A stretch of DNA of 64,000 nt, from IMG/VR virus record IMGVR_UViG_3300006931_000029, positions 62,001-126,000 of that record. One strand, given 5' to 3'. Under the pieces are notes generated by a model. That model ran no database searches and had not been told where the DNA came from. It saw nothing but the letters and a program-made list of their open reading frames with translations. A program made the translations under genes and the position numbers. Positions 1,564 to 54,334 of this stretch are shown here, piece by piece (position 1 is the stretch's first letter; every line of letters starts with the position of its first letter).

Positions 1564-1589
1564 TCTGAACCTGAGAACGTATTTACTAC

Positions 1590-1916
1590 ATGCCGCACAG
1601 TATCGTCAAGAAACTTCTTGGGGAAGCAAGTCAAGATGCGCGATTCGACGTCAACGCTCGAATCGAAATCTGGGTCACTATTTCGGACCTCGAGTACGAT
1701 CGGCGGATTCAGGCCCTTCAGCAAGACCCGCGTCCAGTGGAGGCTAAAATCGTTGACGCAAAGAAGATTGCCCTGCAGGTCGCTCACGACAAGGTCAATG
1801 AGAAATCTACGGGAGACTTTGACATCACAGCTGACATCAGCATGGAGTCGATGAATGTCAATCGGATCGATTGGGTCGCGCTGGTCAGTCCTCCTCCGCC
1901 TGAGGACGAGGGTTAA
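1590..1916 (+). CDS. hypothetical protein with IVKKLLGE leader (candidate head protein)
   Basis: 108-aa ORF preceded by TATTTAC 3 nt upstream. Its N-terminus matches other small ORFs in the window. Confidence 0.6.
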   Translation: MPHSIVKKLLGEASQDARFDVNARIEIWVTISDLEYDRRIQALQQDPRPVEAKIVDAKKIALQVAHDKVNEKSTGDFDITADISMESMNVNRIDWVALVSPPPPEDEG

Positions 1917-2950
1917 AGTCCGTCTAGCAATCGCTCCAGCGAGTTAATTGAGCTGAACGGCTTTCGCTGTTCGAACGTCTTTACGGCTGCTTTTGCGTCG
2001 TCGTTTGGATCGATACCTTTTGGCAAAGGAGGAGCGACGGTTACCTTGATGATGTTCGTCAGTTTCTTGCAGCTATCCCACGCCGAAGCGATAGCGTCTG
2101 GGTCGAACATCAAACAAAGCTCCTTGATTCCTCGAGCTGTGAGAATTTTGGCTTGTTGTTCCGGGCTAATTTTATGCTTGAAGATGGCGACCGGTACAAC
2201 CTCGTTCGTTCGCAGTTCGTTCTTCAGCGAATAGACGTTGAACATCGATTCGACTACGATTCCGACTTTCGCTTCCGGAGCCCTCAGTCGGTCGATGTCG
2301 TAGACCCAGTAGCGAGAACCTAGTGGGATTTCGTACTTCGTCGGAAACTGCTTCGTCGATGGTTTCTTGCCGGTTTCCGGGTCGGGTTTCGGGTCTCGAT
2401 ACGTCCGTCCTTGGTAGTAAACCACGCGGTCGTATTCCATCACTGGAAAGATGCAAAACGGTTCCCACCTTCCGTCTTCCATCGTGTATCCCGCGCCGGC
2501 ATCTTCGAACGTTTTGAGGTCGAGATTTTTCCGAATTGCCATCTTCTCGATCAGTCTAGCGTATCCGCTTCCTCGGCGTTCGGTTAGCGGTGTGAATCCC
2601 CGCGGAAGTTTGATGTCGTTCGTGACTGCGAGTACGCTTCGCCTAGTTGCGTAGACGGCGTCCAAATCCTTCATCGCGTCGTCAAGCGTGGTCGTATCGT
2701 AGAGAGCGATGTCGCTTAGGTCCGGATCGTGGCCGAGAGTTTTGATCCACGCCAGGAAATCTCCGCCAACGCCACACCGCCAGCAGTTAGTTTTGCCGGT
2801 TTTAAGGTTCACCGACCTGTTGCCGGACTGGTCACCGCATCTGGGTTGCTCGCAGAGCATCACCAGTTCGTCCTGGGACGAACGGGCTTTGACTACTTGA
2901 AACAGTCCCTCGGCGACTGTTTTGAGCTTGCTACCGACTAGTTTTGCCAC
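1913..2950 (-). CDS. DNA primase (Zn finger + TOPRIM; DnaG/gp61-like)
   Basis: N-terminal C..RC....CWRC zinc finger, plus IVVES and LMFDPDA TOPRIM-like motifs. Confidence 0.8.
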   Translation of the reverse strand: MAKLVGSKLKTVAEGLFQVVKARSSQDELVMLCEQPRCGDQSGNRSVNLKTGKTNCWRCGVGGDFLAWIKTLGHDPDLSDIALYDTTTLDDAMKDLDAVYATRRSVLAVTNDIKLPRGFTPLTERRGSGYARLIEKMAIRKNLDLKTFEDAGAGYTMEDGRWEPFCIFPVMEYDRVVYYQGRTYRDPKPDPETGKKPSTKQFPTKYEIPLGSRYWVYDIDRLRAPEAKVGIVVESMFNVYSLKNELRTNEVVPVAIFKHKISPEQQAKILTARGIKELCLMFDPDAIASAWDSCKKLTNIIKVTVAPPLPKGIDPNDDAKAAVKTFEQRKPFSSINSLERLLDGL

Positions 2951-2961
2951 AATGGCAAGAA

Positions 2962-3732
2962 CTATACGTTGGGAACCCCACGGATGAAAGCAGAATCTCT
3001 CATGGCGATGTTTCCACTGATTTCAGGGGTGGGATTGAACGGGAAAATCTCCTCGGGAATAATGACTGCAGAAATCGTTAGGGGCGTCGTGGTGGATTGG
3101 TCAACCCCATTGAACTGAATCGACGAAATCCAGCACTTCTTCATCACAAACGCCATTGAGACTTCCATGCCAGCCGACGCAGAAGCGTTAAGGGCATCCG
3201 CAACGATTCCAGAGGTGTCTTTCGTTGATCCCTGCAAGAAATAGAGCTTGATGTCTTTTTTGAACGTGTCGCCAAGCGGCACAGGAATCTCAGGCAATTG
3301 GACTGACATGTCCTCTGAATTGTACGGTAGCCGGCCGATCCTGCCGAGGATTCTCCAACCGTAGAGAAGCGAGTAAATCTTGGAGCGCTTAAGCTTCGAC
3401 GTCGTCGAAATGTTGTTCGAGTTCGAAAAACCGGTCGTCGCCGAGTCAACCAGAAAATCAATCCGGACTCCGCCAACAGATTCATCAAAACTAGGGTACA
3501 GTCTTGGCGTGTTCAGGGCCTTGACTTCGACCTCTGCAATCCTCGCTTCTGGAAATGTAACTTGCCGCGCAAACTGCACCGTGTCGCCTGGCTGAGGAAG
3601 CTCCAACTGGTTCGAAAATGGCGCGCGGCGGACAGCCGTCAACACGTTCTCCAAGTCAAGAACCCAAAGATCGCCGCGCTGGGCTTCGAACCCGCCGGCG
3701 TTTCCCCAGTTGTTTCGAGACTTGATGACCAT
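2962..3732 (-). CDS. tail tube-like paralog (baseplate tube initiator, gp48/gp54-like)
   Basis: N-terminus NNWGNAGGFEAQRGDLWVLDL parallels NQWGAAGSGLDQQRSDLFYVLL of the tube gene at 7794..8477, and FPEA/CWISSIQF motifs are tube-like. Confidence 0.55.
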   Translation of the reverse strand: MVIKSRNNWGNAGGFEAQRGDLWVLDLENVLTAVRRAPFSNQLELPQPGDTVQFARQVTFPEARIAEVEVKALNTPRLYPSFDESVGGVRIDFLVDSATTGFSNSNNISTTSKLKRSKIYSLLYGWRILGRIGRLPYNSEDMSVQLPEIPVPLGDTFKKDIKLYFLQGSTKDTSGIVADALNASASAGMEVSMAFVMKKCWISSIQFNGVDQSTTTPLTISAVIIPEEIFPFNPTPEISGNIAMRDSAFIRGVPNV

Positions 3733-3735
3733 GAT

Positions 3736-3743
3736 GTATCTAC
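3736..3743. promoter_or_regulatory. bidirectional TANWTAV element between divergent structural genes 15 bp apart
   Basis: TATCTAC lies 4 nt before GTG 3748 (+), and TAGATAC lies 3 nt before the ATG at 3732 (-). Confidence 0.55.
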
Positions 3744-3747
3744 TTTG

Positions 3748-4560
3748 GTGAAATCGTATCTAGGAACTTACGCCGGCATCGTCGAGTCCATCAAGGACCC
3801 GGAAAAACGTGGCCGAGTTAAAGTCAGAGTTCCAACAGTTTATGGACCCGCACAAGGTTCGATCCCGACGACGGACGTTCCATGGGCACTACCTGCTGGA
3901 TTACCTTCCGGCGGCACCAAAAACTCTGGCGGCATTGATTGGATGCCGGAAATTGGCGATCAGGTGTTGGTGCGTTTTCTTGATGGCGAACCAGAGAAAC
4001 CGGTGTGGGAATGGTTCATGCAGAATTCCGAGCAGGCGAAGCAATATCCGTTTCGCAACTACGAAGGAGACACGCCGAATCGCCATGCGCTGCTGACTCG
4101 CTACGGCCAATCGATCGAACTGGCCGAGTCCGGCATCACCGCTGTCACCAGCAAGGGTTACGTTATCCAAATTGTCGATGCTGGTGACGAGATGGACGGC
4201 TCGATTGAAGCTCGAACTGGCAAGGGCTACTTTGTGCAGATGATGGACGCGACTGACCAAATAGCCATCTTCGTGAAGTATGTCAATGCGAACTACGAGG
4301 ATTTGACCTTCATGGGGACAACGTCATTCTTCCAGATGGCTCAAAAATTCGAGATTCTAACACCTCGAACCAACGTCAAATCAGCTCGCATCGACCTTGG
4401 CGATGGGGCAGACGATCCGATCATCCGTAAGTCTGACCTGGAAAACGTTTGCAGTCAAATTGTTGCTTGGGCAAACTCGCACACCCACCCGAAAGTTCCG
4501 CCCACAAACACCCCGCTTAGAACCCGAGTGACGTTCAGCAGGGTGGTCTACGCCGTGTGA
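3748..4560 (+). CDS. baseplate spike / gp5-VgrG OB-fold protein (gpV-like)
   Basis: YAGIVESIKDPEKRGRVKVRVP, WALP, WMPEIGDQVLVRFLDGEPEKPVW and a C-terminal HTH (His-x-His) apex. GTG 3748 is preferred over the track start at 3562. Confidence 0.85.
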   Translation: MKSYLGTYAGIVESIKDPEKRGRVKVRVPTVYGPAQGSIPTTDVPWALPAGLPSGGTKNSGGIDWMPEIGDQVLVRFLDGEPEKPVWEWFMQNSEQAKQYPFRNYEGDTPNRHALLTRYGQSIELAESGITAVTSKGYVIQIVDAGDEMDGSIEARTGKGYFVQMMDATDQIAIFVKYVNANYEDLTFMGTTSFFQMAQKFEILTPRTNVKSARIDLGDGADDPIIRKSDLENVCSQIVAWANSHTHPKVPPTNTPLRTRVTFSRVVYAV

Positions 4561-4573
4561 GATACTTAGGCAG

Positions 4574-5101
4574 ATGAAGCCAAAGGGATATGTCGCACTC
4601 GCCGGAATCAGGGACGCCGAAGGTAAGTCGGTCTCCTTCGAGAAGGCAATCAAATACGGTTGGGTGAAACCCGGTCGTGTCCCTCGTGGTTTCGACCTTG
4701 AACCTGGCACGATGCCGGTCGGTCAAAATCTCTTCCTCGACAACGGTCGACAGCTTCTCGCCTACGTCTGGGGTGGCCGCTCTCCGATGTCCGACTACGC
4801 CTGCCAGAAGTTCGGCGTAGGAACCGGAACAACTCCAGCGGCTGTGATCGATGTAGCCCTCGAATCTCCAGCTCCTTTCTCGGTTGGTGTGACCACCAAG
4901 AACGTGGACGCCATCACCTTCCCAAGTCCGTTCGTCGCAAGAGTTGAGTTTACGATCGGAGCCAGTCAGTGCAACGGTTACCTGCTGACGGAGTTTGGTC
5001 TCTTCAGCGGCAACAATGTCCTTCTCGCCCGCATCGTCAACGCCGGCTTCAACAAGACGTCCGATTGGGCGCCTAGTCTGACGTGGTCGATCCGCTATTG
5101 A
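4574..5101 (+). CDS. baseplate/tail-fibre associated structural protein
   Basis: C-terminal NGYLLTEFGLF..LLARIV..FNKTS..LTWSIRY resembles tail collar/wedge-type proteins. TACTTAG lies 4 nt upstream. Confidence 0.45.
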   Translation: MKPKGYVALAGIRDAEGKSVSFEKAIKYGWVKPGRVPRGFDLEPGTMPVGQNLFLDNGRQLLAYVWGGRSPMSDYACQKFGVGTGTTPAAVIDVALESPAPFSVGVTTKNVDAITFPSPFVARVEFTIGASQCNGYLLTEFGLFSGNNVLLARIVNAGFNKTSDWAPSLTWSIRY

Positions 5102-5117
5102 GCCGTAGTTATCCAAC

Positions 5118-5471
5118 ATGAACATCACGTGCGTTGACACCCAAACGATCGGAGGCAGCTCCGCCCAGGTTTTTGAGATGATTCAGACTGGTGCGGTCAA
5201 AGCCTTGGTGACCCTTGCCAACAACGGCACAAACACCGCGAACTACAAGTTCCAGGAGAAGATTGCCAACACGTGGACGGACATGGCCGCGTTCGGCGAT
5301 CCGTTAAACGACACAATCTCGCCTGCAGAGATTCTCGCCATTTCGGTTGAATCCGCCTATCCTCAGGTGCGCCTGATGGCCAACGCTTCTGGCGGAACTG
5401 AATTTGAATTCGCGGTGCTTCGCTACTTCGTCCGTGGCGACGGTGGCGCGCTTCCGATTCTCTCGCTCTAA
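5118..5471 (+). CDS. hypothetical beta-rich structural protein
   Basis: 117-aa ORF with TAGTTAT upstream and weak likeness to 15068..15514. Confidence 0.5.
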   Translation: MNITCVDTQTIGGSSAQVFEMIQTGAVKALVTLANNGTNTANYKFQEKIANTWTDMAAFGDPLNDTISPAEILAISVESAYPQVRLMANASGGTEFEFAVLRYFVRGDGGALPILSL

Positions 5472-6367
5472 GGGTCCCAGTCGTCGACTGCCCGTCCTGC
5501 TGCTTCTGGGTCGAGCATCGTTATTCCTCTGGAATACTCGTCCAGCACTGGACCTTCATCCAAGTCGGGTTTTGGATTTGGTATGAAATTCGCAGGCTCA
5601 TAGTCTCCTTCCGCTTCCGTGTTCAGAAGCGTGTAGCCGAGCGCTTCGAAAAATTGGTCTTGCTGCGACGGAAACTTCTCGCCTGTTTTCTTGTCGAACT
5701 GCGGGGTAGAGCCAAGCTTCGAAGCGACCAAGTCCATCACTTCCTCCAGAGTAGAGTCGGGAGGAATTGCGTCGAAGATTTTCTTCACGGCAGACGGACC
5801 ACACTTGTTCACGCCGTTGATTCCGTCGCCAGGATCGCCGATGATCGCCAAAGCCACAGCGACTTGAATAGGTTTGTAAACATCCCACCGTTCACAAATC
5901 TCCCTGTCGGTCAGGAGGTGCTTCCGGTTGAGGCAATAATACTCAGACAAGGGACCTTTCAGTTGTTGAAGGTCTTTGTCGCCTGACATGACGACCGCCC
6001 TGATCCCCCGGGACGTTGACTGAGCTACGGCAGTCGCTACCAGGTCATCCGCTTCATAGTCCCCGTGGTGAGCATAGGCGCGGTCTCCAAACGCGTCACG
6101 GACAAACCTGGCAAAGTCCACCAGGTCGTCTTCGTACTCCTGAGGCTTGGGCTTCCTGGGCTTGTTGGTCTTGGGTTTGCCGTCGAAGCAGAAGAGGATT
6201 CGGCTCGGTACGCCGATCTCCGACCGCATTGCGTAAAATAAACTTTTGAACGCGGCAATGAGGTAGCCCCTGTCGACGTACTTCAAGTGGCTTGCTTGAG
6301 CTGCGTAGAAGGATTTTGCAAATAGTCCGTTTGCGTCTACGATAAGGTCCTTGCCATTGTGCTGCAC
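5468..6367 (-). CDS. 5'-3' exonuclease (FEN/T4 RNase H, PIN fold)
   Basis: LIVDANG, FCFDGK, YEADD, SGDKDLQQL and GDPGDGINGV motifs. Confidence 0.9.
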   Translation of the reverse strand: MQHNGKDLIVDANGLFAKSFYAAQASHLKYVDRGYLIAAFKSLFYAMRSEIGVPSRILFCFDGKPKTNKPRKPKPQEYEDDLVDFARFVRDAFGDRAYAHHGDYEADDLVATAVAQSTSRGIRAVVMSGDKDLQQLKGPLSEYYCLNRKHLLTDREICERWDVYKPIQVAVALAIIGDPGDGINGVNKCGPSAVKKIFDAIPPDSTLEEVMDLVASKLGSTPQFDKKTGEKFPSQQDQFFEALGYTLLNTEAEGDYEPANFIPNPKPDLDEGPVLDEYSRGITMLDPEAAGRAVDDWDP

Positions 6368-6380
6368 GGAGTGAAGAACC

Positions 6381-6587
6381 TCACTTACCTTTGAACTTGT
6401 TCAACTCCTCTTTCTCGGCCTTTGCGGCTTCTTCCGCCCATTCTAGTAACCACGTCAGAGCGTAGTCAGGGGTCCTCAATAAGTCAATCGTCATGCCCCG
6501 GTTGCTGGAGGCGAGAATGAATCGCTCTCTCCAGCGAGCCTTTTCGTGGGCGAAGACCCCGTCAACGAAAAAAGTCAGCGTCGAGAT
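6381..6587 (-). CDS. gp51-like hub assembly ORF overlapping the gp26-like gene in the +1 frame, without a nearby ATG
   Basis: The open frame reads ISTLTFFVDGVFAHEKARWRERFILASSNRGMTIDLLRTPDYALTWLLEWAEEAAKAEKEELNKFKGK*. It is not in the ORF track and fills the gap exactly. Confidence 0.55.
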   Translation of the reverse strand: MSTLTFFVDGVFAHEKARWRERFILASSNRGMTIDLLRTPDYALTWLLEWAEEAAKAEKEELNKFKGK

Positions 6588-7314
6588 TTAGGTCGTGAGA
6601 GTACTGATTGCCACACGAGACGCACTTGTGCTTGATCTCGGTTCCGAGATGCGGCGTAAGCTTTTCCATCATCTCCGTGTAGTAGGAGAAATCAGCGGGT
6701 GGCAGAGCGTTGAAGTACGTGATTGCTTCGTCCGGCGTGTCAGGTGACGTCTCGTTGACTGCGACCAGAGCCGAAACTGCCCGAGTCATCTTGCTAGAGA
6801 CTTTGTCAGTTTCAGGGCGTTCCAACACGCCTAGTTCATCTCGAACCAAGAGAGGTCGAAGACGAATCTTGTCTTTGCAAACAGGAAGCGTGATCTCGTC
6901 GTAGCCCACGTAGTTGTCCGGCTTTTCAGAGATTTTCTCGAGGTTGTCAGGAACCACGAGTTTCACCTGTTCGACGTGACCGCATGATGGACATTTGCTG
7001 TCGTAGTTCAGCGATGAATCTCTGGCGAGTGCTCGCGCAACCAGCAGAATCGTGATGACGTCGCCGACGGGCATCGAGTCAACTTTGTCGAGGTTGATTA
7101 GTTTTTTCACCACCTCGAACGAGATGCGATCAACCGGCACAGTGCGGAGAGCTTTGATAACCCACTCGTCGACGCTTTGATCCCACGGATAGACCGTCAC
7201 CTTGCCGCCAGGCAGCTTGTCCGGCATGGAGTAACCATGAGACAGTAAGGTGATTTCCTTCTTGAACTTCTCTCGTGCCGGGGCGAGAGATTGCAGATTG
7301 GATTTGATGGCCAT
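6562..7314 (-). CDS. baseplate hub assembly protein (T4 gp26-like)
   Basis: GDVITILLVARA, CPSCG, KIRLRPLLVRDE, CVSCG and the terminal LDADFF. Start MAIKS (7314) is preferred because GTTCTA lies 6 nt upstream. Confidence 0.7.
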   Translation of the reverse strand: MAIKSNLQSLAPAREKFKKEITLLSHGYSMPDKLPGGKVTVYPWDQSVDEWVIKALRTVPVDRISFEVVKKLINLDKVDSMPVGDVITILLVARALARDSSLNYDSKCPSCGHVEQVKLVVPDNLEKISEKPDNYVGYDEITLPVCKDKIRLRPLLVRDELGVLERPETDKVSSKMTRAVSALVAVNETSPDTPDEAITYFNALPPADFSYYTEMMEKLTPHLGTEIKHKCVSCGNQYSHDLNLDADFFR

Positions 7315-7344
7315 GTCAACTAGAACTACTCGACCAAATAGAAC

Positions 7345-7370
7345 GGCCGTCACCCAGGCAGGTGACGGCC
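7345..7370. promoter_or_regulatory. perfect 10-bp intergenic hairpin GGCCGTCACC/GGTGACGGCC
   Basis: Read directly from sequence. It has no U-tract, and its stem core matches the stem at 42147..42211. Confidence 0.5.
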
Positions 7371-7410
7371 GTCAACTAATGGCTAAATTGCGCCTTGAGG
7401 GCGCAAGACG

Positions 7411-7764: not shown

Positions 7765-7793
7765 GGAAAGAAGAGACGAGTAGAAGAGAACGA

Positions 7794-8477: not shown

Positions 8478-8511
8478 GGTAGTATCAGGTAGATTTTACG
8501 CGGCTCGCCGA

Positions 8512-10599: not shown

Positions 10600-10624
10600 G
10601 TGAGTGGTGGTCTTGCTATTCTAA

Positions 10625-11530: not shown

Positions 11531-11557
11531 CGGCCTAATTACGCACCCAAGTCAGAT

Positions 11558-14459: not shown

Positions 14460-14466
14460 ACCCTAT

Positions 14467-14691
14467 TTACTTGGTGCCAGCGATCTTCTTGACTAGTTTG
14501 GAAGCTTGGCGGACTGGGCCGACCACGTCTCTGCTCGGGAAGCCTTTTTTGCGTCCACCGTTGGTTAGCGTGCTAACCATTTGCGAATACAGGTCAAATT
14601 TATTGCTGCCTTTCAGGATGTTGAGCCCCTTCATCCTGGCATATTTCTTGGCGCTTGCCGGTAACGGCAGTTTTCCGATGTCGTCTCTCAT
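14467..14691 (-). CDS. small basic hypothetical protein
   Basis: 74-aa ORF overlapping the upstream gene by ATGA. Confidence 0.45.
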   Translation of the reverse strand: MRDDIGKLPLPASAKKYARMKGLNILKGSNKFDLYSQMVSTLTNGGRKKGFPSRDVVGPVRQASKLVKKIAGTK

Positions 14692-17105: not shown

Positions 17106-17145
17106 GAGCTATCTATCTTCCTGAGCGAGGCGCGTTCTGCATCGT

Positions 17146-19957: not shown

Positions 19958-19958
19958 A

Positions 19959-22511: not shown

Positions 22512-22563
22512 CTTCGTAACTACCAGCGCCAGACGGCGTCTGGCCAAGGCCAAGAAAAAAGTG

Positions 22564-22591
22564 TTTACATTTCCGTTCTAAGTCTCATGAT
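22564..22591 (+). promoter_or_regulatory. possible sigma70-like promoter for ligase
   Basis: TTTACA-N16-CATGAT. Confidence 0.4.
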
Positions 22592-26674: not shown

Positions 26675-26695
26675 GAGTGCAAGAACGCTTCCGAA

Positions 26696-29742: not shown

Positions 29743-29783
29743 GGTAGGAGGTATTTGACTATTTGTGGTGGTTGATGCTCAGC

Positions 29784-32482: not shown

Positions 32483-32495
32483 GTTCTTGTGTCTG

Positions 32496-43643: not shown

Positions 43644-43649
43644 GCGTCT

Positions 43650-44621
43650 TCAAAGAACGCCAGCCGCGTGCAGACAGCTCACGTGCTGAACAGCCAACCC
43701 TATTCTGCTCCAAAAACGTACGGCATCGGTCACAATCTCAGGCGCTTCAAAATCATCTGGCCTGAAACCGTGTCTGTCCAGCACCTCGGTCAACGCCTGG
43801 TGAAACATCTTCGACCTTAGTTCGAAGTACGCCGTAGCAACGTCTTTGCGCTTGCGCAACCATCCGTTTGTCCGGTGAATTTCAGCTCGGTGTTTTATGA
43901 TGGCAGGCGATATTGGAGGATGCGAATCGTGCCACTCGTAGTAGGATGGTTCGAGACACAACCACGTAGAGTCAAGCTTGAGTTCATTTTCGGCGTAGAA
44001 TTTTTCAGTGGGCGACCCACTAAATCTCAGCTTGTGACCGACTATCCACATTCCGGCAAGGACTTCGCTGTTCAAAATTCTAGCTTTGGCTCTTGTCACT
44101 TCGTCTCCACCAGTCAGGGTAGCAAGACTCTCGCTGTCGAAGGTGCCGTATTTGTCTCGAGCAAGGCTTCTGAAATCGTTTACAAGCGTCGCAGCGCCTT
44201 TCGCGAAAAGATAACTGGCGTAGAACCTAGTTCCTGGCGCTAGCTGCTTTCTGGCCAGCATCACGCACATCATGAAAAGCTTGATCGAACAACGAGCCTG
44301 TTCTGCTGCTAAGATCAACTTGTGTTCCGCATCCTGAAATCTACGCAAAGAATCTGGTTGTTCATCTCCAAAGACCAGACGATAACACAGCTTGTAAAGC
44401 GAATCGACGTCATCGGACTCGTGGACAGAAAACTTCGACAGGTCTGCCGGAACAAAGTCGAACTCGATCTTGCTCAGTCGGACCTTTCCTCTCCTCACGA
44501 CGGAGACTCCTCTGCATTCTTTCGAGTGCGGACATTTTTGGCAAACTTGGTCAGCGCTGTCGTATTCTACCCCGTAACACTTGAGCGGGACATCGACCGC
44601 GATTCGAGAAACATTCGGCAT
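43650..44621 (-). CDS. hypothetical protein with an N-terminal 4-Cys Zn motif
   Basis: CYGVEY-x6-C-x2-C-x5-C. Start MPNVS preferred; it overlaps the polymerase ATG at CATG. Confidence 0.6.
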   Translation of the reverse strand: MPNVSRIAVDVPLKCYGVEYDSADQVCQKCPHSKECRGVSVVRRGKVRLSKIEFDFVPADLSKFSVHESDDVDSLYKLCYRLVFGDEQPDSLRRFQDAEHKLILAAEQARCSIKLFMMCVMLARKQLAPGTRFYASYLFAKGAATLVNDFRSLARDKYGTFDSESLATLTGGDEVTRAKARILNSEVLAGMWIVGHKLRFSGSPTEKFYAENELKLDSTWLCLEPSYYEWHDSHPPISPAIIKHRAEIHRTNGWLRKRKDVATAYFELRSKMFHQALTEVLDRHGFRPDDFEAPEIVTDAVRFWSRIGLAVQHVSCLHAAGVL

Positions 44622-47640: not shown

Positions 47641-47647
47641 ATTTTTG

Positions 47648-47675
47648 TTTACATTGCCGTTCCAACGTGTATGGT
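47648..47675 (+). promoter_or_regulatory. sigma70-like promoter
   Basis: TTTACA-N16-TATGGT, 7 nt before ATG 47683. Confidence 0.65.
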
Positions 47676-47682
47676 GGTGTGA

Positions 47683-48426
47683 ATGTTAGACCAGCCATTG
47701 CAAATTAGGGCGGTCGTAAAAGGCCAGAATCGCTACTGCGGACCGGCCGCTGTTTCGATCATAGCCGGTATTGATACGACGCGAGCGGCTCGGCTCCTCA
47801 GGCAGGTAAGTGGAAAGAGAATGATTTGCGGTGTTCACAATCATCACGTGATCGCAGCCCTGAAGAGGCTAGGTTACGAACTCCGCCCTACGCGTTTCCA
47901 CGGTGGAATAACGTTTGCGAATTGGTTCAGTGGCATCGACCATGACCCTTCCAGGTTGTATCTCATCTGTGCAGGCCACCATTACTCAGTCGTTCAAGGC
48001 GATCAGTATTGCTGTTCCCAAACTGTGAAGATCGTCGCGGTCTCTGAGGCTCCTCATCGCAGAGCTAGAATGCAGAATCTTTGGACTGTCCACAGGGTCG
48101 CAGAGATCGACTCTGAAACAGTGGTACAGTCGCCTCCAAAAGACAACTCGTGGTTGAAACGAATCACCGTGTCTCGCAGGGCAAAACAGTTTGGCGTTGA
48201 GATCGACGACCAGTCTCGACAAGGAGGTGTCATCTGGGTTTATCCTCCCGTCGGGTTATTCGACGACAATGGCAACGATCCTCAAGACCCATACAACGAC
48301 GAGCACTTCCACGATTCGTGGGAAGAAGCAGAGAAAGCCGTTGAAGCCTATATCGCTCTGAAGATTCGGCCAGCAGTCGTTCTTCCCGAAGCAGCATGCC
48401 CGAACTCGCAGAATCCTTCATCCTGA
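47683..48426 (+). CDS. probable early protein with a papain/C39-like peptidase motif
   Basis: YCGPAAVS...GHHYSVVQGD Cys/His pattern. Confidence 0.5.
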   Translation: MLDQPLQIRAVVKGQNRYCGPAAVSIIAGIDTTRAARLLRQVSGKRMICGVHNHHVIAALKRLGYELRPTRFHGGITFANWFSGIDHDPSRLYLICAGHHYSVVQGDQYCCSQTVKIVAVSEAPHRRARMQNLWTVHRVAEIDSETVVQSPPKDNSWLKRITVSRRAKQFGVEIDDQSRQGGVIWVYPPVGLFDDNGNDPQDPYNDEHFHDSWEEAEKAVEAYIALKIRPAVVLPEAACPNSQNPSS

Positions 48427-49268: not shown

Positions 49269-49881
49269 ATATCTCAACGATCAAGTTGGAGAATTCTGCT
49301 CTGACATCTGAGTGTGTCACGCAAGCGAGATTGTTGCAGACTAAATCGGTCAAAGCTAGCGGAAAACTGGTTGCAATCAGCTGCGGGGCATAAGCGCCCA
49401 AGAGTGGCAGAAGACTGAACATCTTTTTGCCGAAGACTAAGTCGGAAGTCGATCCCCACTTCTCGAAATCAACTGTCTTGGCGTTGGCGAAGCTCATTCC
49501 GCCGGAAATCAGGGCGTTGAACAGATGGACAGCAATCAACCGCGTCACCGGCATGTCCATCTTGTCCAGGGCGTCCGTGAACGAAGAGGAGCTTGATAGA
49601 CTCTGCTGTACCGCTTTGATGCGCGTCAGAGAGGCAGGAACAAGTGCCAGACACCACCTGTTGGTCGTCTCTTCAGTGAACCGTTCGGCCTGGGCAAACC
49701 CGATTGCACGAGTGATGTGGACGAGCATCTCCTCCTTGGGAAACGTCTTGTCCGCCAGGATCAATTCGCCATCAGCTACGCGAGCGATGTCCGGCGTATT
49801 GCCAGACCGGACAACCTTCAGGTCGTTTAAGTCCGGCTTGAGGCCGATGGCGTTGAAGCGACTTTCGACGACATCAAGCAT
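49234..49881 (-). CDS. hypothetical protein
   Basis: 215-aa ORF coupled to the upstream gene. Confidence 0.55.
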   Translation of the reverse strand: MLDVVESRFNAIGLKPDLNDLKVVRSGNTPDIARVADGELILADKTFPKEEMLVHITRAIGFAQAERFTEETTNRWCLALVPASLTRIKAVQQSLSSSSSFTDALDKMDMPVTRLIAVHLFNALISGGMSFANAKTVDFEKWGSTSDLVFGKKMFSLLPLLGAYAPQLIATSFPLALTDLVCNNLACVTHSDVRAEFSNLIVEIFNSDLAVDGSA

Positions 49882-50444
49882 CAGGAGGCAGGAACGACGG
49901 CGGGGACAGCTGCGGCAGGCGCACCTGGGGTCGCCGGCTTCGGGCCAGCGTTGAGACGCTTGAGCTCTTCGGCCTTGTAGGAACGCTCAACCTTCGGACG
50001 AGAATTGTCAGCGAAGGAAAGTTCAAAGGTACCATCCGGTTTGCGGGACTTGACGACGGCGCGGATCGGTTGGCCGTTTTCAGCAACGGCGACTTCGTCA
50101 CCGATTTCAACCACACCACCAGCCGTAGGAGCTCCGAACGCCTCAACGACCTGACAGGCCGCGGTGTGGCTCGTGAACCGGCGATAGATGTTGTTGACTG
50201 GCGCCTGCTCAGGCTTCGGCGAATCCTTGTATCCGGCAGCGAGACGGCGAAGCTCTTCGAGAATTTCGTGCGACTCCGTGACCGAGAGTTCGCCTGAGTC
50301 GTAGTTCGGTTCGACCCAGCGACGTTCCATGGCAAGCTCATACCCGGCTTGGCCTAGGGTCTCCTGCAGCTCACCAAACATGATGATCGGCGACACGCTG
50401 TTTCGGCGATTCAAGACCTTGAAAGCGACTTCGGATTCGTTCAT
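49881..50444 (-). CDS. hypothetical protein with a C-terminal SH3-like segment
   Basis: VEIGDEVAV..AVVKSRKPDGTFELSF pattern, with TAATTAA 4 nt upstream. Confidence 0.6.
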   Translation of the reverse strand: MNESEVAFKVLNRRNSVSPIIMFGELQETLGQAGYELAMERRWVEPNYDSGELSVTESHEILEELRRLAAGYKDSPKPEQAPVNNIYRRFTSHTAACQVVEAFGAPTAGGVVEIGDEVAVAENGQPIRAVVKSRKPDGTFELSFADNSRPKVERSYKAEELKRLNAGPKPATPGAPAAAVPAVVPAS

Positions 50445-50470
50445 GTTCTTAATTACACAACCTTTTCCAC

Positions 50471-51019
50471 ATGCCTATCGTATTCGAAAAAGCTCCTCAG
50501 GACGTCCGGGAACTCCTTCAACTTGTCATCCAAGAACATCACCGGGACCTGGCGGACGCTAACGTCAATGTCGGAGTCTTGATGCAAACCAAGTTCGACA
50601 ACGATGATAACGAGATTCCTTCTTTGAAGTGTCACGGGGCCATGGCGAACGCCGTCATCAAGGTTGTTTCTCGGAAAGATCGCACTCACCGCAACGAAGA
50701 CTCCGAGATCGTGGTTGACGCCGTTATCTGGAAGACGTTGTCGGAGAAATGTAAACGAGCGCTGCTTGACCACGAGCTGACCCACCTCGTCGTGAAACGG
50801 GATCGCAAGACGCAGAAGTTTGCGTTGGACGATCTTAACCGTCCGCGCCTCGCTATGATCCCTGACGACTTCACGTTGACGGGATTCCTCGACGTCGTTC
50901 GCCGCAACGGTGACGCGGCTCTGGAGTACCAGTCGGTTTCCCGCGTTCACTTCGCAGTCATGGAAGCAGCAACGCAGGCCGGCAAGAAGGTTGCAGAAGA
51001 GATGGCCGCAGCGTCCTGA
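50471..51019 (+). CDS. putative phage metallopeptidase (HExxH)
   Basis: IWKTLSEKCKRALLDHELTHL motif. Confidence 0.75.
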   Translation: MPIVFEKAPQDVRELLQLVIQEHHRDLADANVNVGVLMQTKFDNDDNEIPSLKCHGAMANAVIKVVSRKDRTHRNEDSEIVVDAVIWKTLSEKCKRALLDHELTHLVVKRDRKTQKFALDDLNRPRLAMIPDDFTLTGFLDVVRRNGDAALEYQSVSRVHFAVMEAATQAGKKVAEEMAAAS

Positions 51020-51300
51020 TGACTGAAGTCGTCCATTGTCGACGCGAACTTTTCGACGTCTTCATTGGTCGCCCGTCGAAGTGGGGTAATCCGTACGTCG
51101 TGGGCCGTGACGGTTCACGAACCCAAGTCATTCAAAAATATCGAGCCTGGGTTGTGAACCAACCGCAACTGATGGCTGCGTTACCCGAACTGCGTGACAA
51201 GATTCTCGGCTGTTACTGCAGGCCATTGGCCTGCCACGGCGACGTGTTGGTTGATCTTATCGCCACCGAGGTGGTGAATCAGGACAAGACTCAGTCGTAA
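51019..51300 (+). CDS. DUF4326-family protein
   Basis: DVFIGRPSKWGNPY..LGCYCRPLACHGDVL motif. Confidence 0.88.
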   Translation: MTEVVHCRRELFDVFIGRPSKWGNPYVVGRDGSRTQVIQKYRAWVVNQPQLMAALPELRDKILGCYCRPLACHGDVLVDLIATEVVNQDKTQS

Positions 51301-51751
51301 GCTTCGTCTTCAGGTACGCGATGCACATGCACTTCTGGCACAGGAAGCCATGATAGAAGGGGCATCCACGACATTTTGCGTATCGCTCTTCGTGTTGGGT
51401 TGAAGACACTGTTTGAAACCCACTTCGTCTCCACTCAACCATGGATGACGCAAAGCGCCTCATCACTTCGCCACCAGATAGGTTCGCCTGCTGAGTGGCG
51501 GCGAGAGCAATCATCGGCGATGGCAAAACCTGTTTGCCGCAGCAGTCGGAGTTCGCAACCCCAGTTTTCAGCTCGATGTCAGGAGCGTAACCGGCGTTTC
51601 CAACCGGTGGAAACCGCTTCTCGGGGCACCCCATGAAGCTGTTCAGATTGAAATTCTTCAGGCACCTTCCATTCCACCGAGGACAACCGAGGCAGATTTT
51701 CTGGCGTCCTGGAACGTCAGGTTGCGTTCGGTTGTTGCAGCAGCTTGGCAC
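51257..51751 (-). CDS. Cys-rich protein (DUF6171-like C-terminus)
   Basis: RYAKCRGCP..CQKCMC..KTK..SCP..RW pattern. Confidence 0.55.
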   Translation of the reverse strand: MPSCCNNRTQPDVPGRQKICLGCPRWNGRCLKNFNLNSFMGCPEKRFPPVGNAGYAPDIELKTGVANSDCCGKQVLPSPMIALAATQQANLSGGEVMRRFASSMVEWRRSGFQTVSSTQHEERYAKCRGCPFYHGFLCQKCMCIAYLKTKLTTESCPDSPPRWR

Positions 51752-52091
51752 GACGAGGTTTCTTTTCTTTTTCTGGTGCGTTCAGTTTTCTGATGTCGTC
51801 GTCAGTGAGAAAGTCGTCTTGGTCGAAATCACTCCACTTGAGTCCCATCGCCGCCAGATTGTCCATCTCATCGATTACAGAATCGAGCTTGTCCTCTCTG
51901 ACTCTGGCGTTCAACCAAACCTGGAGCTTCTCTAGGTAGAAGGCCCGGTGTTTTTGCCAACTGTCAGCAAAGTAAAAGTGCCCGATTTCATTCTCGATAA
52001 AATCGTAGGCAAGGTCATGTGCCTCAATGTCGTATCGCGGATGATCGTCAAAGGCAAATTCAACTAAGCTCTTGGCTCTCGAGTGTGGCAT
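51717..52091 (-). CDS. hypothetical protein
   Basis: 124-aa acidic ORF in the operon. Confidence 0.5.
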   Translation of the reverse strand: MPHSRAKSLVEFAFDDHPRYDIEAHDLAYDFIENEIGHFYFADSWQKHRAFYLEKLQVWLNARVREDKLDSVIDEMDNLAAMGLKWSDFDQDDFLTDDDIRKLNAPEKEKKPRRAKLLQQPNAT

Positions 52092-52611
52092 CTCCCTTTA
52101 CGTACGTTCGAATGCTGCCGAGACAGAAAGTACTCTTGTTCGCCTCCAGCAGAATCCGAAGGTCCTGCCTGGTTATCGTCCCTCTATCAACCAAGGTGTC
52201 GATTGCATCCTTGTCTAATCCTGAAGATACACACGAAAATTCGGCGCTGTGACCGCAGCTAAATAGCCAAAGAGCAACGGCGTGACGAGAACGGTTGATG
52301 CCGCCGGAACAGTGGACAAACGTCGGAAGTCTTGCTCCAAAACAATAGTCAAGGGCTCGCTTGATTCCAAACAACGACGTGGTCGGCCACTTGGCGTATT
52401 CGTCAATTGGAAACCACAGCGCTTTGATCCACGGCGAAGCGTCAAACGTGAAGTACGGGCTGTCGGTGACATTGATGACGGCACGAAAATTCTCCAGCAA
52501 CCATGCTCGTTGCTGGTGGATTTCTAGATTTTCAACTGAACCAATCGTGATACCGAAATCCGGAACCACGACCTTCACCCACGTCGGTTTACTGGAGGTC
52601 GTTAACGCCAT
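52060..52611 (-). CDS. dual-specificity/tyrosine phosphatase-like protein
   Basis: FVHCSGGINRS (HCx5R) motif. Confidence 0.8.
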   Translation of the reverse strand: MALTTSSKPTWVKVVVPDFGITIGSVENLEIHQQRAWLLENFRAVINVTDSPYFTFDASPWIKALWFPIDEYAKWPTTSLFGIKRALDYCFGARLPTFVHCSGGINRSRHAVALWLFSCGHSAEFSCVSSGLDKDAIDTLVDRGTITRQDLRILLEANKSTFCLGSIRTYVKGDATLESQELS

Positions 52612-52999
52612 CTAAACGTCTTCCCGTGTTAGGTTCGATTTGGACAGCTCGGTCGTCCCACAATTCCGTCATCGCAAAATCCTTTTGACACGTGATCGGA
52701 AGGACAACGCCAAAGTGCTTCTCACACCATTTTCTAATGTGAATCGCTGCCTGCATCGCGTCGCTCTCTCGGTCGTTGGCGCCAACGAACTGCTCAACCC
52801 GATCTTCAGGGTGAATCATGTTTAGCGGCCAGACACGAGCTGTGAAGATTCGAACTTTCTTCCCTTGGACGAGCCAACGTCGAAGACGCAGAGCCATCGC
52901 TGGCACTGGTTCTCCGATGTGTTCAGCGTTTTTCCACCCCTGGTAATCGGCCAAAGTTCCGTCGAGGTCAACCCCGATCCATCCGCCAATGTGAGCCAT
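52589..52999 (-). CDS. HAD-superfamily phosphatase-like protein
   Basis: IGVDLDGTLA, IFTAR and ELWDDRA motifs. Confidence 0.8.
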   Translation of the reverse strand: MAHIGGWIGVDLDGTLADYQGWKNAEHIGEPVPAMALRLRRWLVQGKKVRIFTARVWPLNMIHPEDRVEQFVGANDRESDAMQAAIHIRKWCEKHFGVVLPITCQKDFAMTELWDDRAVQIEPNTGRRLDGVNDLQ

Positions 53000-54300
53000 T
53001 AGATTTCGTAGAGTCCGTGCAGTCGTGGACCATCCTTGATGGCTGCAAGATGCGCCTTCGTGTAGAGGATATTGTGGTCCTTGTGGAACTGCGACGGAAA
53101 GTAATTCTCAAGGTGCACAATCTGGAAACGGCACGTCGAGCCGAGATGTTTGATGTAGTGCTGCATGTGTTTCTTCGTGTAGTACCAGAAGCTGTTTGAG
53201 TTCCAGAACGACACGTGGCTCGGGTCTTGGTACGCTCCACGCCCATCAGTTGACGGCACTTCGATCAAGAACAAACCTCCGTGGTGCAGAACTCGGTACG
53301 CCTCATTCATAAACTGCACCACCTTGTTAGGATGAATGTGTTCAATCAAATCCTGAGCGCGTAGTGCTCCGACGCTGTTGTCTGGAAATGGCCACGTCTC
53401 TTCGAGATTGGCGATCACGGGCGCGTCGTGAACGTCGACTCCTTCCCAGCCAGGAGGAGGGTTGATTCCGCCGCCGAGATCGAGACAGCGAAGACCTTGC
53501 CGTTTCCAAAAAAAGACAGCAAAATCTTGGATGAACCTGGCGTGGACTTGCCACGTCAGCTGTTCGATCAATTTCTGGTGCTTCAACCACGTGTTGTCGC
53601 CGTGGATCAGATATTTGTAGAGCACCTTCTCGATGTGGTAAAAATTGCCCATGCTCATCTGATAGAGCTTGCACATCAGCTCAAGATCATCGCAAACCAG
53701 CATGTTTTCGTTGTGCCCTCCGACAGCGTTGTAAGCGTCCATTCTCCACGCTCGAACATGGTCAGGAGCATACCAGATTCTCGTGACGTTTTGAGGAATT
53801 GCCAGCGGGTGAACAGCCACTCGGTGAGTTTCCACTGTGGCACCATGAAATTCGCGCTCAGTGTATTCCCAGCCATAAGCCGGACCATAAATTTCAGGTT
53901 TGCCGTCGGCGTGAATTCGCACAGCGTCAGAGAAAACAAAGACGGCGTTAGTCTTCAGGAACGCGGCCAAAACTTCTTCCAGACAATCTACTGATAGCTC
54001 GTCATCGTGGTCGAACTCGACGGCGAAGGGACTCATGGCGTGTTGACACGCCTTCTTTTTCAAAGCGCCGACGTTGATCGAACCATCTTCGTTTTTCTTA
54101 CCCTCAAACGGGAAAAATTTGACGCGCTGATCGTTCTCGACTATTGCGTAGCATTCTTTAGACGAGTTCTTTTGCAGGATTTTGCCGTTGAGCACCACGA
54201 TCCATTCCCAGTCAGTAAGCGTCTGGCGCTTCAAACTTTGGTAGGCTTGCTCAAGCCACTTAATCGAGTTGGTTGGTGTGATAACTGAAATCTGAGCCAT
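52999..54300 (-). CDS. GT2 glycosyltransferase fused to a class I SAM methyltransferase
   Basis: ISVITPT, WIVVLN, EFDHDD and CDDLELM (GT2), followed by LDLGGG, WPFPDNSV and AYRVLHHGG..IEVP (MTase). Confidence 0.88.
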   Translation of the reverse strand: MAQISVITPTNSIKWLEQAYQSLKRQTLTDWEWIVVLNGKILQKNSSKECYAIVENDQRVKFFPFEGKKNEDGSINVGALKKKACQHAMSPFAVEFDHDDELSVDCLEEVLAAFLKTNAVFVFSDAVRIHADGKPEIYGPAYGWEYTEREFHGATVETHRVAVHPLAIPQNVTRIWYAPDHVRAWRMDAYNAVGGHNENMLVCDDLELMCKLYQMSMGNFYHIEKVLYKYLIHGDNTWLKHQKLIEQLTWQVHARFIQDFAVFFWKRQGLRCLDLGGGINPPPGWEGVDVHDAPVIANLEETWPFPDNSVGALRAQDLIEHIHPNKVVQFMNEAYRVLHHGGLFLIEVPSTDGRGAYQDPSHVSFWNSNSFWYYTKKHMQHYIKHLGSTCRFQIVHLENYFPSQFHKDHNILYTKAHLAAIKDGPRLHGLYEI

Positions 54301-54334
54301 GTTGCGTTAGTAGAACGCCCTTAGCTCATCGGAA

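What the first reader, a model, noticed from the sequence alone, without database searches (positions are those of the whole stretch)
1573..54316. Second motif, GTTCTN, 6 nt upstream of replication and enzyme genes: candidate middle promoter
Seen: GTTCTT/A/G lies exactly 6 nt before the starts of primase (2957-2962), the 5'-3' exonuclease (6374-6379), the gp26-like gene (7321-7326), SbcC (17134-17139) and the DUF6445 oxygenase (26681-26686). The gap is 7 nt for GT2 (32483-32488), 9 nt for GroES (1573-1578) and helicase (43653-43658), and 10 nt for GT2-MTase (54311-54316). This gene set barely overlaps the TANWTAV set. A -12..-7 position is where a -10 element would sit for a leaderless transcript. 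It is not a Shine-Dalgarno sequence. A translational signal is the alternative.
Basis: partly seen in the sequence, partly recalled or inferred. Interest (0 to 1): 0.7.

Follow-up and report, generated by a model that had tools for sequence, protein, structure and literature searches.

The report
Conserved GTTCT signal before phage genes
In an uncultured 225-kb soil phage and its distant relatives, the word GTTCT sits 12-13 bases before the start codons of about a tenth of the genes, mostly DNA-metabolism and enzyme genes. It lies exactly where these phages' ordinary early promoters keep their -10 box, so it is most likely a new promoter element for messages that begin at the start codon.

Summary
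All nine sites are at the stated coordinates. Over the whole 224,954-bp genome, GTTCT is the most enriched of all 1,024 five-letter words 11-18 nt before gene starts: 26 genes against 2.5 expected. The same holds in two relatives whose helicases are only 45-48% identical, G001 (28 against 1.8) and G002 at 68% GC (22 against 1.4), with the peak at -12/-13. None of the three genomes uses Shine-Dalgarno sequences.

Their sigma-70-like early promoters (TGTTTACA, 16-18 nt, hexamer, about 6 nt, ATG) place the -10 hexamer at -12..-7, which implies leaderless mRNAs. GTTCTW occupies the same slot.

GTTCT genes encode replication proteins and enzymes. A second motif, TAnTTAG, marks structural genes, and no ortholog pair was scored with GTTCT in one genome and that motif in the other. 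GTTCT also precedes a tmRNA gene, abuts a terminator, lies in 13-27-nt divergent spacers, and is not enriched at translationally coupled junctions.

I favour a -10-like promoter element of a distinct, probably middle, class (confidence 0.55). No transcript-start data exist, no reading factor was found, and the word carries little information. The helicase site is probably incidental. The main rival is an RNA-level translational signal (0.25).

The parts
2957..2962 (-).
   Evidence: GTTCT is kept before the orthologs at 86%, 47%, 45%, 42% and 40% protein identity, 7-10 nt from the start. Variants are ATTCT and GCTCT in two orthologs, and in one (L071) the word lies about 37 nt upstream. In L067 and L068 it fills a 13-nt divergent spacer.
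6374..6379 (-). GTTCTT, 6 nt before the GTG start (6367) of the 5'-3' exonuclease gene
   Evidence: The upstream gene's TGA stop lies just before the motif. The G001 ortholog lacks the motif.
7321..7326 (-). GTTCTA, 6 nt before the ATG (7314) of the gp26-like baseplate gene
   Evidence: This ATG is the second candidate start of the ORF; the longest start is GTG at 7353. A second GTTCT lies at 7340-7344.
17134..17139 (+). GTTCTG, 6 nt before the GTG start (17146) of the SbcC-like ATPase gene
   Evidence: It lies in a 40-nt divergent spacer. The opposite gene (start 17105) has a TAGATAG word before its ATG.
26681..26686 (-). GTTCTT, 6 nt before the ATG (26674) of the DUF6445 gene
32483..32488 (+).
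   Evidence: The motif is kept before the orthologs in L058, L059 and G001. In L059 the upstream in-frame ATG is followed by a stop, which fixes the downstream start.
1573..1578 (-). GTTCTC, 9 nt before the ATG (1563) of the Cpn10/GroES-domain gene
   Evidence: It lies in a 26-nt divergent spacer that also holds TATTTAC for the opposite gene. The G001 ortholog has GTTCT beginning 14 nt before its start codon.
43653..43658 (-). GTTCTT, 9 nt before the helicase ATG (43643); probably incidental
   Evidence: It lies in the last codons (GTT CTT TGA) of an upstream co-directional ORF. It is kept only in the 89%-identical relative. Relatives at 70% identity or less have a stop 5-6 nt before the start, or overlapping stop and start.
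54311..54316 (-). GTTCTA, 10 nt before the ATG (54300) of the GT2-methyltransferase gene
22575..22580 (+).
   Evidence: The -35 box TGTTTACA is at 22562-22569. The G001 ligase ortholog also has GTTCT at -12/-13.
48379..48384 (+).
   Evidence: It is kept in the closest relative L058 and lost in L059. The Pfam names are those of the L058 and L059 orthologs.
845..849 (-). GTTCT, 14 nt before the mature 5' end (830) of a phage tmRNA gene
   Evidence: ARAGORN places the tmRNA at window 476-830. The word is kept at the same distance in L062 and in the 86% relative L063.
47646..47685 (+). Example of an early promoter with leaderless geometry: TGTTTACA, 16 nt, TATGGT, 7 nt, ATG (47683)
   Evidence: Across 80 such promoters in the family, the hexamer begins at -12 (33 promoters), -13 (15) or -14 (12) from the start codon.
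11534..11541 (-). Example of the second motif: TAATTAGG, 3 nt before the ATG (11530) of a 301-aa gene with no family match, in the tail gene block
   Evidence: Genes with this motif that could be named include a head-tail adaptor and tail fibres; a 2,130-aa protein with no family match also carries it.

Best explanation
GTTCTW (G at -12 or -13 from the start codon) is the -10-like core of a phage-specific promoter class with no -35 box. The host RNA polymerase, redirected by an unidentified factor conserved in this phage family, would open DNA there. It would start transcription at or within a few bases of the A or G of the start codon, giving leaderless or near-leaderless mRNAs. The class drives replication, repair and other enzyme genes and a tmRNA. 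It is distinct from the sigma-70-like early class (TGTTTACA, 16-18 nt, TAnnnT) and from the TAnTTAG class of structural genes, so it is probably the middle class.

Shown: the positional enrichment, the conservation, the shared geometry with early promoters, the absence of Shine-Dalgarno use, and the functional partition. Inferred: that it acts on DNA as a promoter, that the transcripts are leaderless, and the timing.
For: 1. **Enrichment.** G000 has 26 genes against 2.5 expected, and GTTCT is the top five-letter word. G001 has 28 against 1.8, with 16 at -12 and 7 at -13. G002, at 68% GC, has 22 against 1.4. GTTCT is also a top word in many 20-kb loci of relatives at 47-68% GC.
2. **Same slot as a true -10 box.** In 80 sigma-70-like early promoters of the family, the hexamer begins at -12 (33), -13 (15) or -14 (12) from the start codon. 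The distance from the -35 box to the start peaks at 28-30 nt. In G001 the form is TGTTTACA, 16 nt, TATAGT, 6 nt, ATG. This is the geometry reported for leaderless genes in Deinococcus, with the -10 motif 6-7 bp before the ORF (PMC12340547).
3. **No Shine-Dalgarno use**.
4. **Base before the start codon.** It is a pyrimidine in 81% of GTTCT genes, 80% of early genes and 80% of TAnTTAG genes, against 58% of coupled genes. Fisher p is 0.009 for GTTCT genes against coupled genes, and 6e-5 for the three classes pooled. This fits the pyrimidine(-1)/purine(+1) start-site preference, which I cite from my own knowledge.
5. **Functional partition.** TAnTTAG genes include an adaptor and tail fibres. Among 69 ortholog pairs, none was scored GTTCT in one genome and TAnTTAG in the other.
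6. **Contexts that call for a promoter.** GTTCT lies 14 nt before a tmRNA, and this is conserved. In G001 a terminator's T-run abuts GTTCT at -12. It sits in 13-27-nt divergent spacers with one motif per direction. It is found before 26% and 19% of genes at divergent junctions, against 2% and 1% at random positions.
7. **Coupled junctions.** GTTCT is not enriched there: 1 in 95.
8. **Inside early promoters.** It occurs 10 times against 1.8 expected between the -35 box and the start codon, a stretch that would not be transcribed.
9. **Variable distance.** In the metallopeptidase orthologs it is at -26 in G000 and L058 and at -15 in L059.
10. **Footprint.** The word is kept before the 'primase' orthologs down to 40% protein identity.
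Against: - There are no transcript 5' ends. Public RNA runs give only sparse contigs on the capsid and protease genes.
- The word carries about 10-11 bits. Only position +5 adds information (A or T in 44 of 55 sites), and there is no upstream element.
- The genome holds 479 copies, 212 of them in sense inside genes, with no avoidance. Specificity must come from something I did not see.
- No reading factor was found. The sigma-70-family gene of G000 is absent from six relatives. There is no gp55 homolog.
- GTTCTW lacks the A at -11 that sigma-70-family -10 recognition normally needs (own knowledge).
- Spacing in G000 spreads over 6-12 nt, much like a ribosome-binding site.
- The companion TAnTTAG motif sits 2 nt too close to the start codon for the same geometry.
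- The motif is often not kept at orthologous genes (helicase, exonuclease, SbcC).
- My gene calls are crude.
Confidence: 0.55

Rival explanations
1. GTTCT acts in the mRNA. Either it is a non-Shine-Dalgarno ribosome-recruiting element, or it is the operator of a phage translational regulator that controls a set of replication and enzyme genes, as T4 RegA does.
For: - It sits where a ribosome-binding site would, 6-12 nt before the start codon, in 10-30-nt spacers just after the upstream stop codon.
- It is short and low in information, like a ribosome-binding site.
- The genomes have no Shine-Dalgarno signal, so internal genes need some other way to start.
- The gene set resembles the RegA regulon in function (the RegA regulon is from my own knowledge).
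- At the helicase the word is embedded in the end of the upstream ORF, as Shine-Dalgarno sequences often are.
Against: - It is not complementary to the conserved 16S rRNA 3' tail (own knowledge).
- It is not enriched at overlapping or coupled junctions, where embedded ribosome-binding sites are usual.
- It precedes a tmRNA gene, which is not translated from an upstream start.
- It follows a terminator directly and fills 13-nt divergent spacers, which would force promoters inside the neighbouring coding region.
- It is enriched in the presumably untranscribed part of early promoters.
- The -12/-13 peak in G001 and G002 is tighter than typical ribosome-binding-site spacing.
- It is kept at -26 in some orthologs.
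- No RegA homolog was found.
Confidence: 0.25
2. GTTCT marks an RNA-processing site. A phage or host endoribonuclease would cut polycistronic transcripts there and release mRNAs with very short leaders.
For: - It lies in intergenic positions just upstream of start codons in tightly packed same-strand arrays.
- A short RNA word is typical of sequence-specific endoribonucleases (own knowledge).
- A position before a tmRNA precursor would also fit processing.
Against: - It occurs at divergent junctions and directly after a terminator, where no upstream transcript is expected.
- There are 212 sense copies inside coding regions with no avoidance.
- No candidate nuclease was identified.
- It shares its exact slot with -10 hexamers.
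Confidence: 0.07
3. There is no function. The enrichment would be a by-product of intergenic composition, stop-codon context or wrong start calls.
For: - GTTCT is not over-represented overall.
- Some sites are doubtful: the helicase site, sites inside early promoters, and sites at alternative starts.
Against: - GTTCT is the top of all 1,024 words at this position in three genomes of different GC content, with p from 6e-18 to 1e-23.
- A test that uses no gene calls agrees.
- The signal is strand-specific.
- The word is kept before the 'primase' orthologs down to 40% identity while its flanks diverge.
Confidence: 0.01

Closest known systems
Leaderless genes with a -10 box next to the ORF, as in Deinococcus-Thermus and Actinobacteria (TANNNT 6-7 bp before the ORF; PMC12340547, PMC3160421)
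   Same: A six-base element lies 6-7 nt before the start codon with no Shine-Dalgarno sequence. The early promoters of this phage family have exactly this layout, and GTTCTW takes the same slot.
   Different: The word is GTTCTW, not TANNNT. It lacks the invariant A at the second position. It marks a functional subset of phage genes rather than about a third of all genes without pathway bias. No transcript evidence exists here.
Phage T4 late promoters (TATAAATA at -10, read by gp55 with gp33 and the gp45 clamp; own knowledge)
   Same: A phage-specific promoter class defined by a single -10-region word without a -35 box, scattered in front of many genes of a T4-like genome.
   Different: The sequence is unrelated. 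T4 late transcripts have leaders and Shine-Dalgarno sites. The gene class here is replication and enzymes, not structural. No gp55 homolog was detected. The family's TAnTTAG motif is the more likely analogue of the T4 late box.
Middle and late promoters of Thermus phages P23-45 and phiYS40 (-10-type promoters without -35, many leaderless transcripts; own knowledge, papers not held in the library)
   Same: Phage temporal classes that rely on a -10-region element only and give leaderless mRNAs in a host that translates them.
   Different: Those elements are TA-rich variants of the host -10 box, read by host sigma-A polymerase modified by small phage proteins. GTTCTW is not TA-like, and nothing is known of the host here.
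T4 middle promoters (MotA box at -30 plus a sigma-70 -10 box, with AsiA; PMC7403470)
   Same: They serve a similar functional class, replication and nucleotide-metabolism genes, expressed after the early class.
   Different: The T4 signal replaces the -35 box and keeps a normal -10 box. Here the -10 slot itself is replaced, and no conserved word lies near -30.
Shine-Dalgarno and other ribosome-binding motifs
   Same: The position (6-12 nt before the start), the shortness, and the location in short spacers.
   Different: There is no complementarity to the anti-Shine-Dalgarno sequence. It is absent from coupled junctions. It is present before a tmRNA and inside early-promoter spacers.

Membership tests
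Shine-Dalgarno ribosome-binding site | Purine-rich word complementary to the 3' end of 16S rRNA (GGAGG core) | tested here: not met
   GTTCT has no GGAG, GAGG or AGGA core. Such cores occur before 8.4% of genes against 8.8% of random positions in G000, and none is among the enriched words.
Shine-Dalgarno ribosome-binding site | Located about 5-10 nt upstream of the start codon | tested here: met
   GTTCT ends 6-12 nt before the start, with the mode at 7 nt.
Sigma-70-type promoter (-35/-10) | A -10 hexamer of the form TAnnnT (A at -11, T at -7) | tested here: not met
   The consensus is GTTCTW. The second position is invariably T, and the last position is A or T in 44 of 55 sites.
Sigma-70-type promoter (-35/-10) | A -35 element 16-18 nt upstream of the -10 hexamer | tested here: not met
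   No conserved column lies from -35 to -1 relative to GTTCT in 46, 37 or 55 aligned sites. The family's early promoters do have TGTTTACA.
Leaderless architecture with the -10 box next to the ORF (Deinococcus-Thermus / Actinobacteria type) | Promoter -10 element 6-7 bp upstream of the start codon | tested here: met
   GTTCTN is followed by 6-7 nt and then ATG/GTG at the modal sites. This is the same slot as the hexamer of 80 early promoters. The reference geometry is in PMC12340547.
Leaderless architecture with the -10 box next to the ORF (Deinococcus-Thermus / Actinobacteria type) | Transcript 5' end coincides with the start codon | not testable with these tools
   Only sparse metatranscriptome contigs on the capsid and protease genes exist; no 5' ends are available.
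T4-type late promoter system (gp55) | The word TATAAATA at -10 | tested here: not met
   The motif is GTTCTW. TA-rich words of the TAnTTAG type form a separate class on structural genes.
T4-type late promoter system (gp55) | Phage-encoded gp55-family sigma factor | tested here: not met
   The gp55 families phrog_234 and phrog_12791 (assigned from T4 gp55 itself) give no match at E <= 10 in G000 or G001. A very divergent homolog cannot be excluded.
ECF sigma promoter | A GGAAC-type -35 box paired with a short CGT/GTC-type -10 box | tested here: not met
   C precedes GTTCT in 17 of the 26 G000 sites by word count (CGTTC 17, GTTCT 26), which resembles a CGT-type -10 box. However, no -35 word is conserved. 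The one sigma-70-family gene is absent from six relatives, and the three of them tested by motif position keep the motif.
T4 RegA-type translational operator | Phage-encoded RegA-family repressor | tested here: not met
   PF01818 gives no match at E <= 10 in G000, G001 or G002.

The most novel reading that the evidence does not exclude
A large family of uncultured soil jumbo phages would express its whole genome without Shine-Dalgarno sequences. It would use three classes of minimal promoters placed directly against the start codons. One class uses a -10 element, GTTCTW, that is unlike any sigma-70-family -10 box. That element would be read by a conserved factor that is not recognisably a sigma factor, which would be a new way of redirecting a bacterial RNA polymerase.
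Probability: 0.3. Interest if true: 0.75.

Novelty: new variant of a known kind. Interest (0 to 1): 0.6.

Why it matters
If GTTCTW is a promoter element, it defines a new promoter specificity and implies an unknown polymerase-redirecting factor. The word has no A at -11 and no -35 partner. The phage clade that carries it is abundant in soil and rhizosphere metagenomes and has no cultured member: the best isolate match to its helicase is about 27% identical.

It would also show a jumbo phage running almost entirely on leaderless mRNAs.

In practice, the three motifs give start-codon and temporal-class annotation for hundreds of related metagenomic contigs. They also supply a compact set of candidate orthogonal promoters to test.

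If the signal instead acts on RNA, it would be a conserved ribosome-recruiting or regulatory signal that is not a Shine-Dalgarno sequence, which is of similar interest.

Tried and rejected
- **DNA search against isolates.** A blastn search of 8 kb of the window against 50,697 phage records found nothing. A protein search found only distant SPO1-like and cyanophage helicases.
- **RNA evidence.** Two run searches and two read layings gave short metatranscriptome contigs on the capsid and protease genes only. None lay on GTTCT genes in true RNA runs, and no molecule ends were reported. This neither supports nor refutes the promoter reading.
- **A longer motif.** I looked for a -35 box or extended motif around GTTCT in three site sets. 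Nothing appeared beyond A or T at the sixth position and a weak G-C just before the start codon.
- **A reading factor.**
  - The sigma-70 region 2/4 gene of G000 has no counterpart in G001-G006.
  - gp55 and RegA were not found.
  - Twenty conserved small proteins scanned against PHROGs gave two HU-like DNA-binding proteins, NUDIX, SbcD and others, but no sigma-like hit.
  - One conserved early protein proved to be a ligase or capping-type nucleotidyltransferase.
  - Pfam found no T7-like or multisubunit RNA polymerase domain in the ten largest unannotated proteins.
- **Terminators as a systematic test.** Intrinsic terminators are too rare in these genomes, so only anecdotal cases emerged.
- **The helicase site.** Footprinting showed it is not conserved, so I do not count it as a functional site.
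- **Host inference.** The NAD-ligase's nearest cellular homologs are only 36-37% identical, and the few that carry a name are Flavobacteriia or Elusimicrobiota. This is uninformative.
- **Literature.** No paper in the held library pairs GTTCT with a sigma factor or a start-site consensus.
- **The chained-word idea.** The enriched words GTTCT, TTCTA, TCTAA, CTAAC and TAACC chain to GTTCTAACC, which suggested one long signal pairing with an RNA. I dropped it: most sites carry only GTTCTW, and the TAAC part is explained by stop codons and by the reverse complement of the TAGTTAG motif.

Full report
**Setting.** The window is bases 62,001-126,000 of a single 224,954-bp virus record with direct terminal repeats, rated complete. 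The record was assembled from a rhizosphere metagenome and recurs in soil and rhizosphere runs.
- It encodes T4-like virion and replication proteins: a portal, a gp26-like hub, sheath, tube, major head protein, prohead protease, UvsX, a DnaB-type helicase, a DNA polymerase, SbcC and SbcD homologs (the SbcD homolog lies outside the window), and an NAD-dependent ligase.
- It has no close cultured relative. A DNA search finds nothing, and the best isolate helicase is about 27% identical.
- The helicase has hundreds of metagenomic relatives, many on 200-250-kb contigs.
- I obtained two relatives in full: G001 (222,710 bp, helicase 48% identical) and G002 (172,009 bp, 67.7% GC, helicase 45%). I also obtained about 25 loci of around 20 kb from others.

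- GTTCT is not frequent overall: 143 copies in the window against 170 expected. Its position is what stands out.
- I called genes with a simple codon-bias method that takes the longest ORF start and knows nothing of the motif. In the 25 nt before starts, GTTCT is the most enriched five-letter word: 34 genes against 6.9 expected. In the slot -18..-11 it is the top of all 1,024 words: 26 against 2.5, while the reverse complement occurs 6 times. The G lies mostly at -12 to -15.
- A test that needs no gene calls agrees. ATG or GTG is enriched 7 and 8 nt after GTTCT, at 28 and 23 against about 13 elsewhere, while a control word is flat.
- Shine-Dalgarno cores are no commoner before genes than at random places, and none appears among the enriched words.

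**Conservation.**
- G001 gives 28 genes against 1.8 expected, with 16 at -12 and 7 at -13. G002 gives 22 against 1.4, with 8 at -12 and 6 at -13.
- In the shorter loci, which range from 47 to 68% GC, GTTCT is again among the top words in about half. In L035 it precedes 7 of 23 genes.
Variants ATTCT and GCTCT occur in two cases, and in one ortholog (L071) the word lies about 37 nt upstream.
- It is not kept everywhere. The helicase site survives only in the 89% relative and lies in the last codons of an upstream ORF. More distant relatives have a stop 5-6 nt before the helicase start, or an overlap. I regard that site as incidental. The exonuclease and SbcC orthologs of G001 also lack the word.

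**What surrounds it.**
- Aligning 46, 37 and 55 sites on the word shows no -35-like or other upstream element. The only added information is A or T at the sixth position (44 of 55 sites, G nearly excluded) and a weak G-C just before the start codon.
- The genome has 479 copies on both strands, 212 in sense inside genes. The word alone cannot define function.

**The key context: early promoters are leaderless in layout.**
- These genomes carry many copies of a clear sigma-70-like promoter. In G000 it is TTTTTGTTTACA followed after 16-18 nt by a TAnnnT-type hexamer. In G001 it is TGTTTACA, 16 nt, TATAGT.
- The distance from the -35 box to the first long-ORF start codon peaks sharply at 28-30 nt.
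- In 80 such promoters the hexamer begins at -12 (33), -13 (15) or -14 (12) from the start codon. That leaves 6-7 nt, the usual distance from a -10 box to the first transcribed base. These early genes must therefore be transcribed from the start codon itself.
- This is the layout described for leaderless genes of Deinococcus, where the -10 motif lies 6-7 bp before the ORF (PMC12340547).
- GTTCTW occupies exactly the same slot.

**Three classes.**
It lies 2-3 nt before the start codon.
- Genes with that motif that could be named include a head-tail adaptor and tail fibres; a 2,130-aa protein with no family match also carries it.
The UvsW-like helicase carries an early promoter in G000 and GTTCT only in G001.
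- Among 69 reciprocal-best ortholog pairs of G000 and G001, none was scored GTTCT in one genome and TAnTTAG in the other. Pairs keep their class, lose the motif, or (once) exchange GTTCT for an early promoter.
- A signal that sorts genes by function and is conserved as a class behaves like a temporal promoter class.

**Contexts that discriminate promoter from ribosome-binding site.**
- GTTCT is not enriched where genes overlap or abut: 1 in 95 junctions with gaps of -8 to +10. Embedded ribosome-binding sites are normally common at such junctions.
- It is the commonest motif before genes at divergent junctions, which must have their own promoters: 26% and 19% against 2% and 1% at random positions.
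- Several divergent start codons are only 13-40 nt apart with one motif for each direction. In two 'primase' orthologs the 13-nt spacer reads GTTCTAACTACGC on one strand and carries TAGTTAG on the other.
- In G001 one GTTCT at -12 directly abuts the T-run of a strong terminator hairpin.
- In the window, GTTCT at 845-849 lies 14 nt before the mature 5' end of a tmRNA gene, and this is kept in an 86% relative. A translational signal has no role there, whereas a promoter giving a short precursor leader fits.
- GTTCT occurs 10 times against 1.8 expected between the -35 box and the start codon of early promoters, a stretch that the layout implies is not transcribed. Three of those cases are near-duplicate promoters, so this point is weak.
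- The base before the start codon is a pyrimidine in about 80% of early, GTTCT and TAnTTAG genes, against 58% of coupled genes (Fisher p). This is expected if transcription starts at the purine of the start codon.

**What argues against.**
- There is no direct evidence. The only RNA runs that hold the phage give a handful of 150-280-nt contigs on the capsid and protease genes.
- The word is very short, is not avoided inside genes, and lacks the A at -11 that sigma-70-type -10 recognition uses.
- No reader was found:
  - The single sigma-70-family gene (genome 199834-200742, outside the window) is absent from six relatives. The three of those I tested by position keep the motif: G001, G002, and the 21-kb locus L035 of G003.
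  - gp55 and RegA profiles find nothing.
  - Scans of conserved small proteins gave no sigma-like hit.
  - No T7-like or multisubunit polymerase domain was found in the ten largest unannotated proteins, so the host enzyme is presumably used.
- In G000 the spacing is broader than in G001 and G002.
- The TAnTTAG motif lies 2 nt closer to the start codon than a -10 box should, so the 'three promoter classes' picture is not fully coherent.

**Verdict.**
- The most likely reading is a -10-like promoter element of a distinct, probably middle, class that gives leaderless or short-leader transcripts (confidence 0.55).
- An RNA-level translational or regulatory signal is the main rival (0.25). A processing site (0.07) and chance (0.01) follow.
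- Relative to known systems, it works like T4 late promoters or the middle and late promoters of Thermus phages, which have only a -10 element, combined with the leaderless layout of Deinococcus and Actinobacteria. It fails the sequence-defined membership tests of all of them.
- I rate it a new variant of a known kind, of moderate to high interest, resting on a single missing experiment: mapping of primary 5' ends.

Noticed in passing
window 476-830 (-): A phage-encoded tmRNA with tag peptide GNTIVKAFARSNELRLAA. It is preceded by GTTCT (845-849) and, further upstream, by a TGTTTACA box (about 906-913). An array of 35 tRNA genes lies just before the window, at genome 54.3-61.5 kb on the minus strand.
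   Followed up: partly
genome 132581-132656 (+), outside the window; G001 206066-206140 (+): A tRNA with anticodon CUA (amber-suppressor type; ARAGORN labels it 'Pyl') is present in both G000 and G001. TAG still ends 38 and 84 of the called genes respectively, so any recoding would be partial or stage-specific.
   Followed up: partly
window-wide, e.g. 11534-11541 (-), 4563-4570 (+), 14462-14469 (-): The second motif is TA[ATC]TTAGG here and gTAGTTAG in relatives. It lies only 2-3 nt before the start codons of structural genes, which is 2 nt too close for a normal -10 box. The tail sheath and capsid genes instead have similar words further upstream, followed by 10-20-nt leaders rich in C and A.
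   Followed up: partly
window about 29743-29755 (-): The major head protein start is preceded by ACCTCCTACC. This resembles the anti-Shine-Dalgarno sequence itself rather than its complement.
   Followed up: no
genome 199834-200742 (-), outside the window: A 302-aa sigma-70-family protein (regions 2 and 4) is encoded in the early region of G000 only. It is absent from six related genomes.
   Followed up: yes
genome 27593-28177 (-), outside the window: A conserved early 194-aa protein has the nucleotidyltransferase fold of ATP-dependent ligases and mRNA-capping enzymes.
   Followed up: partly
L067 and L068, upstream of the 'primase' orthologs; window 1564-1589 and 17106-17145: Divergent gene pairs are separated by only 13-40 nt. 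GTTCT faces one gene and a TAnTTAG-type word faces the other, and the two can overlap as reverse complements (GTTCTAAC and GTTAGAAC).
   Followed up: partly
relatives of the helicase (P0008, P0012, P0039 and others): Several helicase homologs are about 800 aa long and carry Hint and homing-endonuclease domains, which indicates inteins. The window's helicase has none.
   Followed up: no
window 56260-56574 (+) and genome 44551-44883 (-): Two paralogous small proteins (104 and 110 aa) match the PHROG family 'DNA binding protein' (phrog_379) and are probably HU-like.
   Followed up: no
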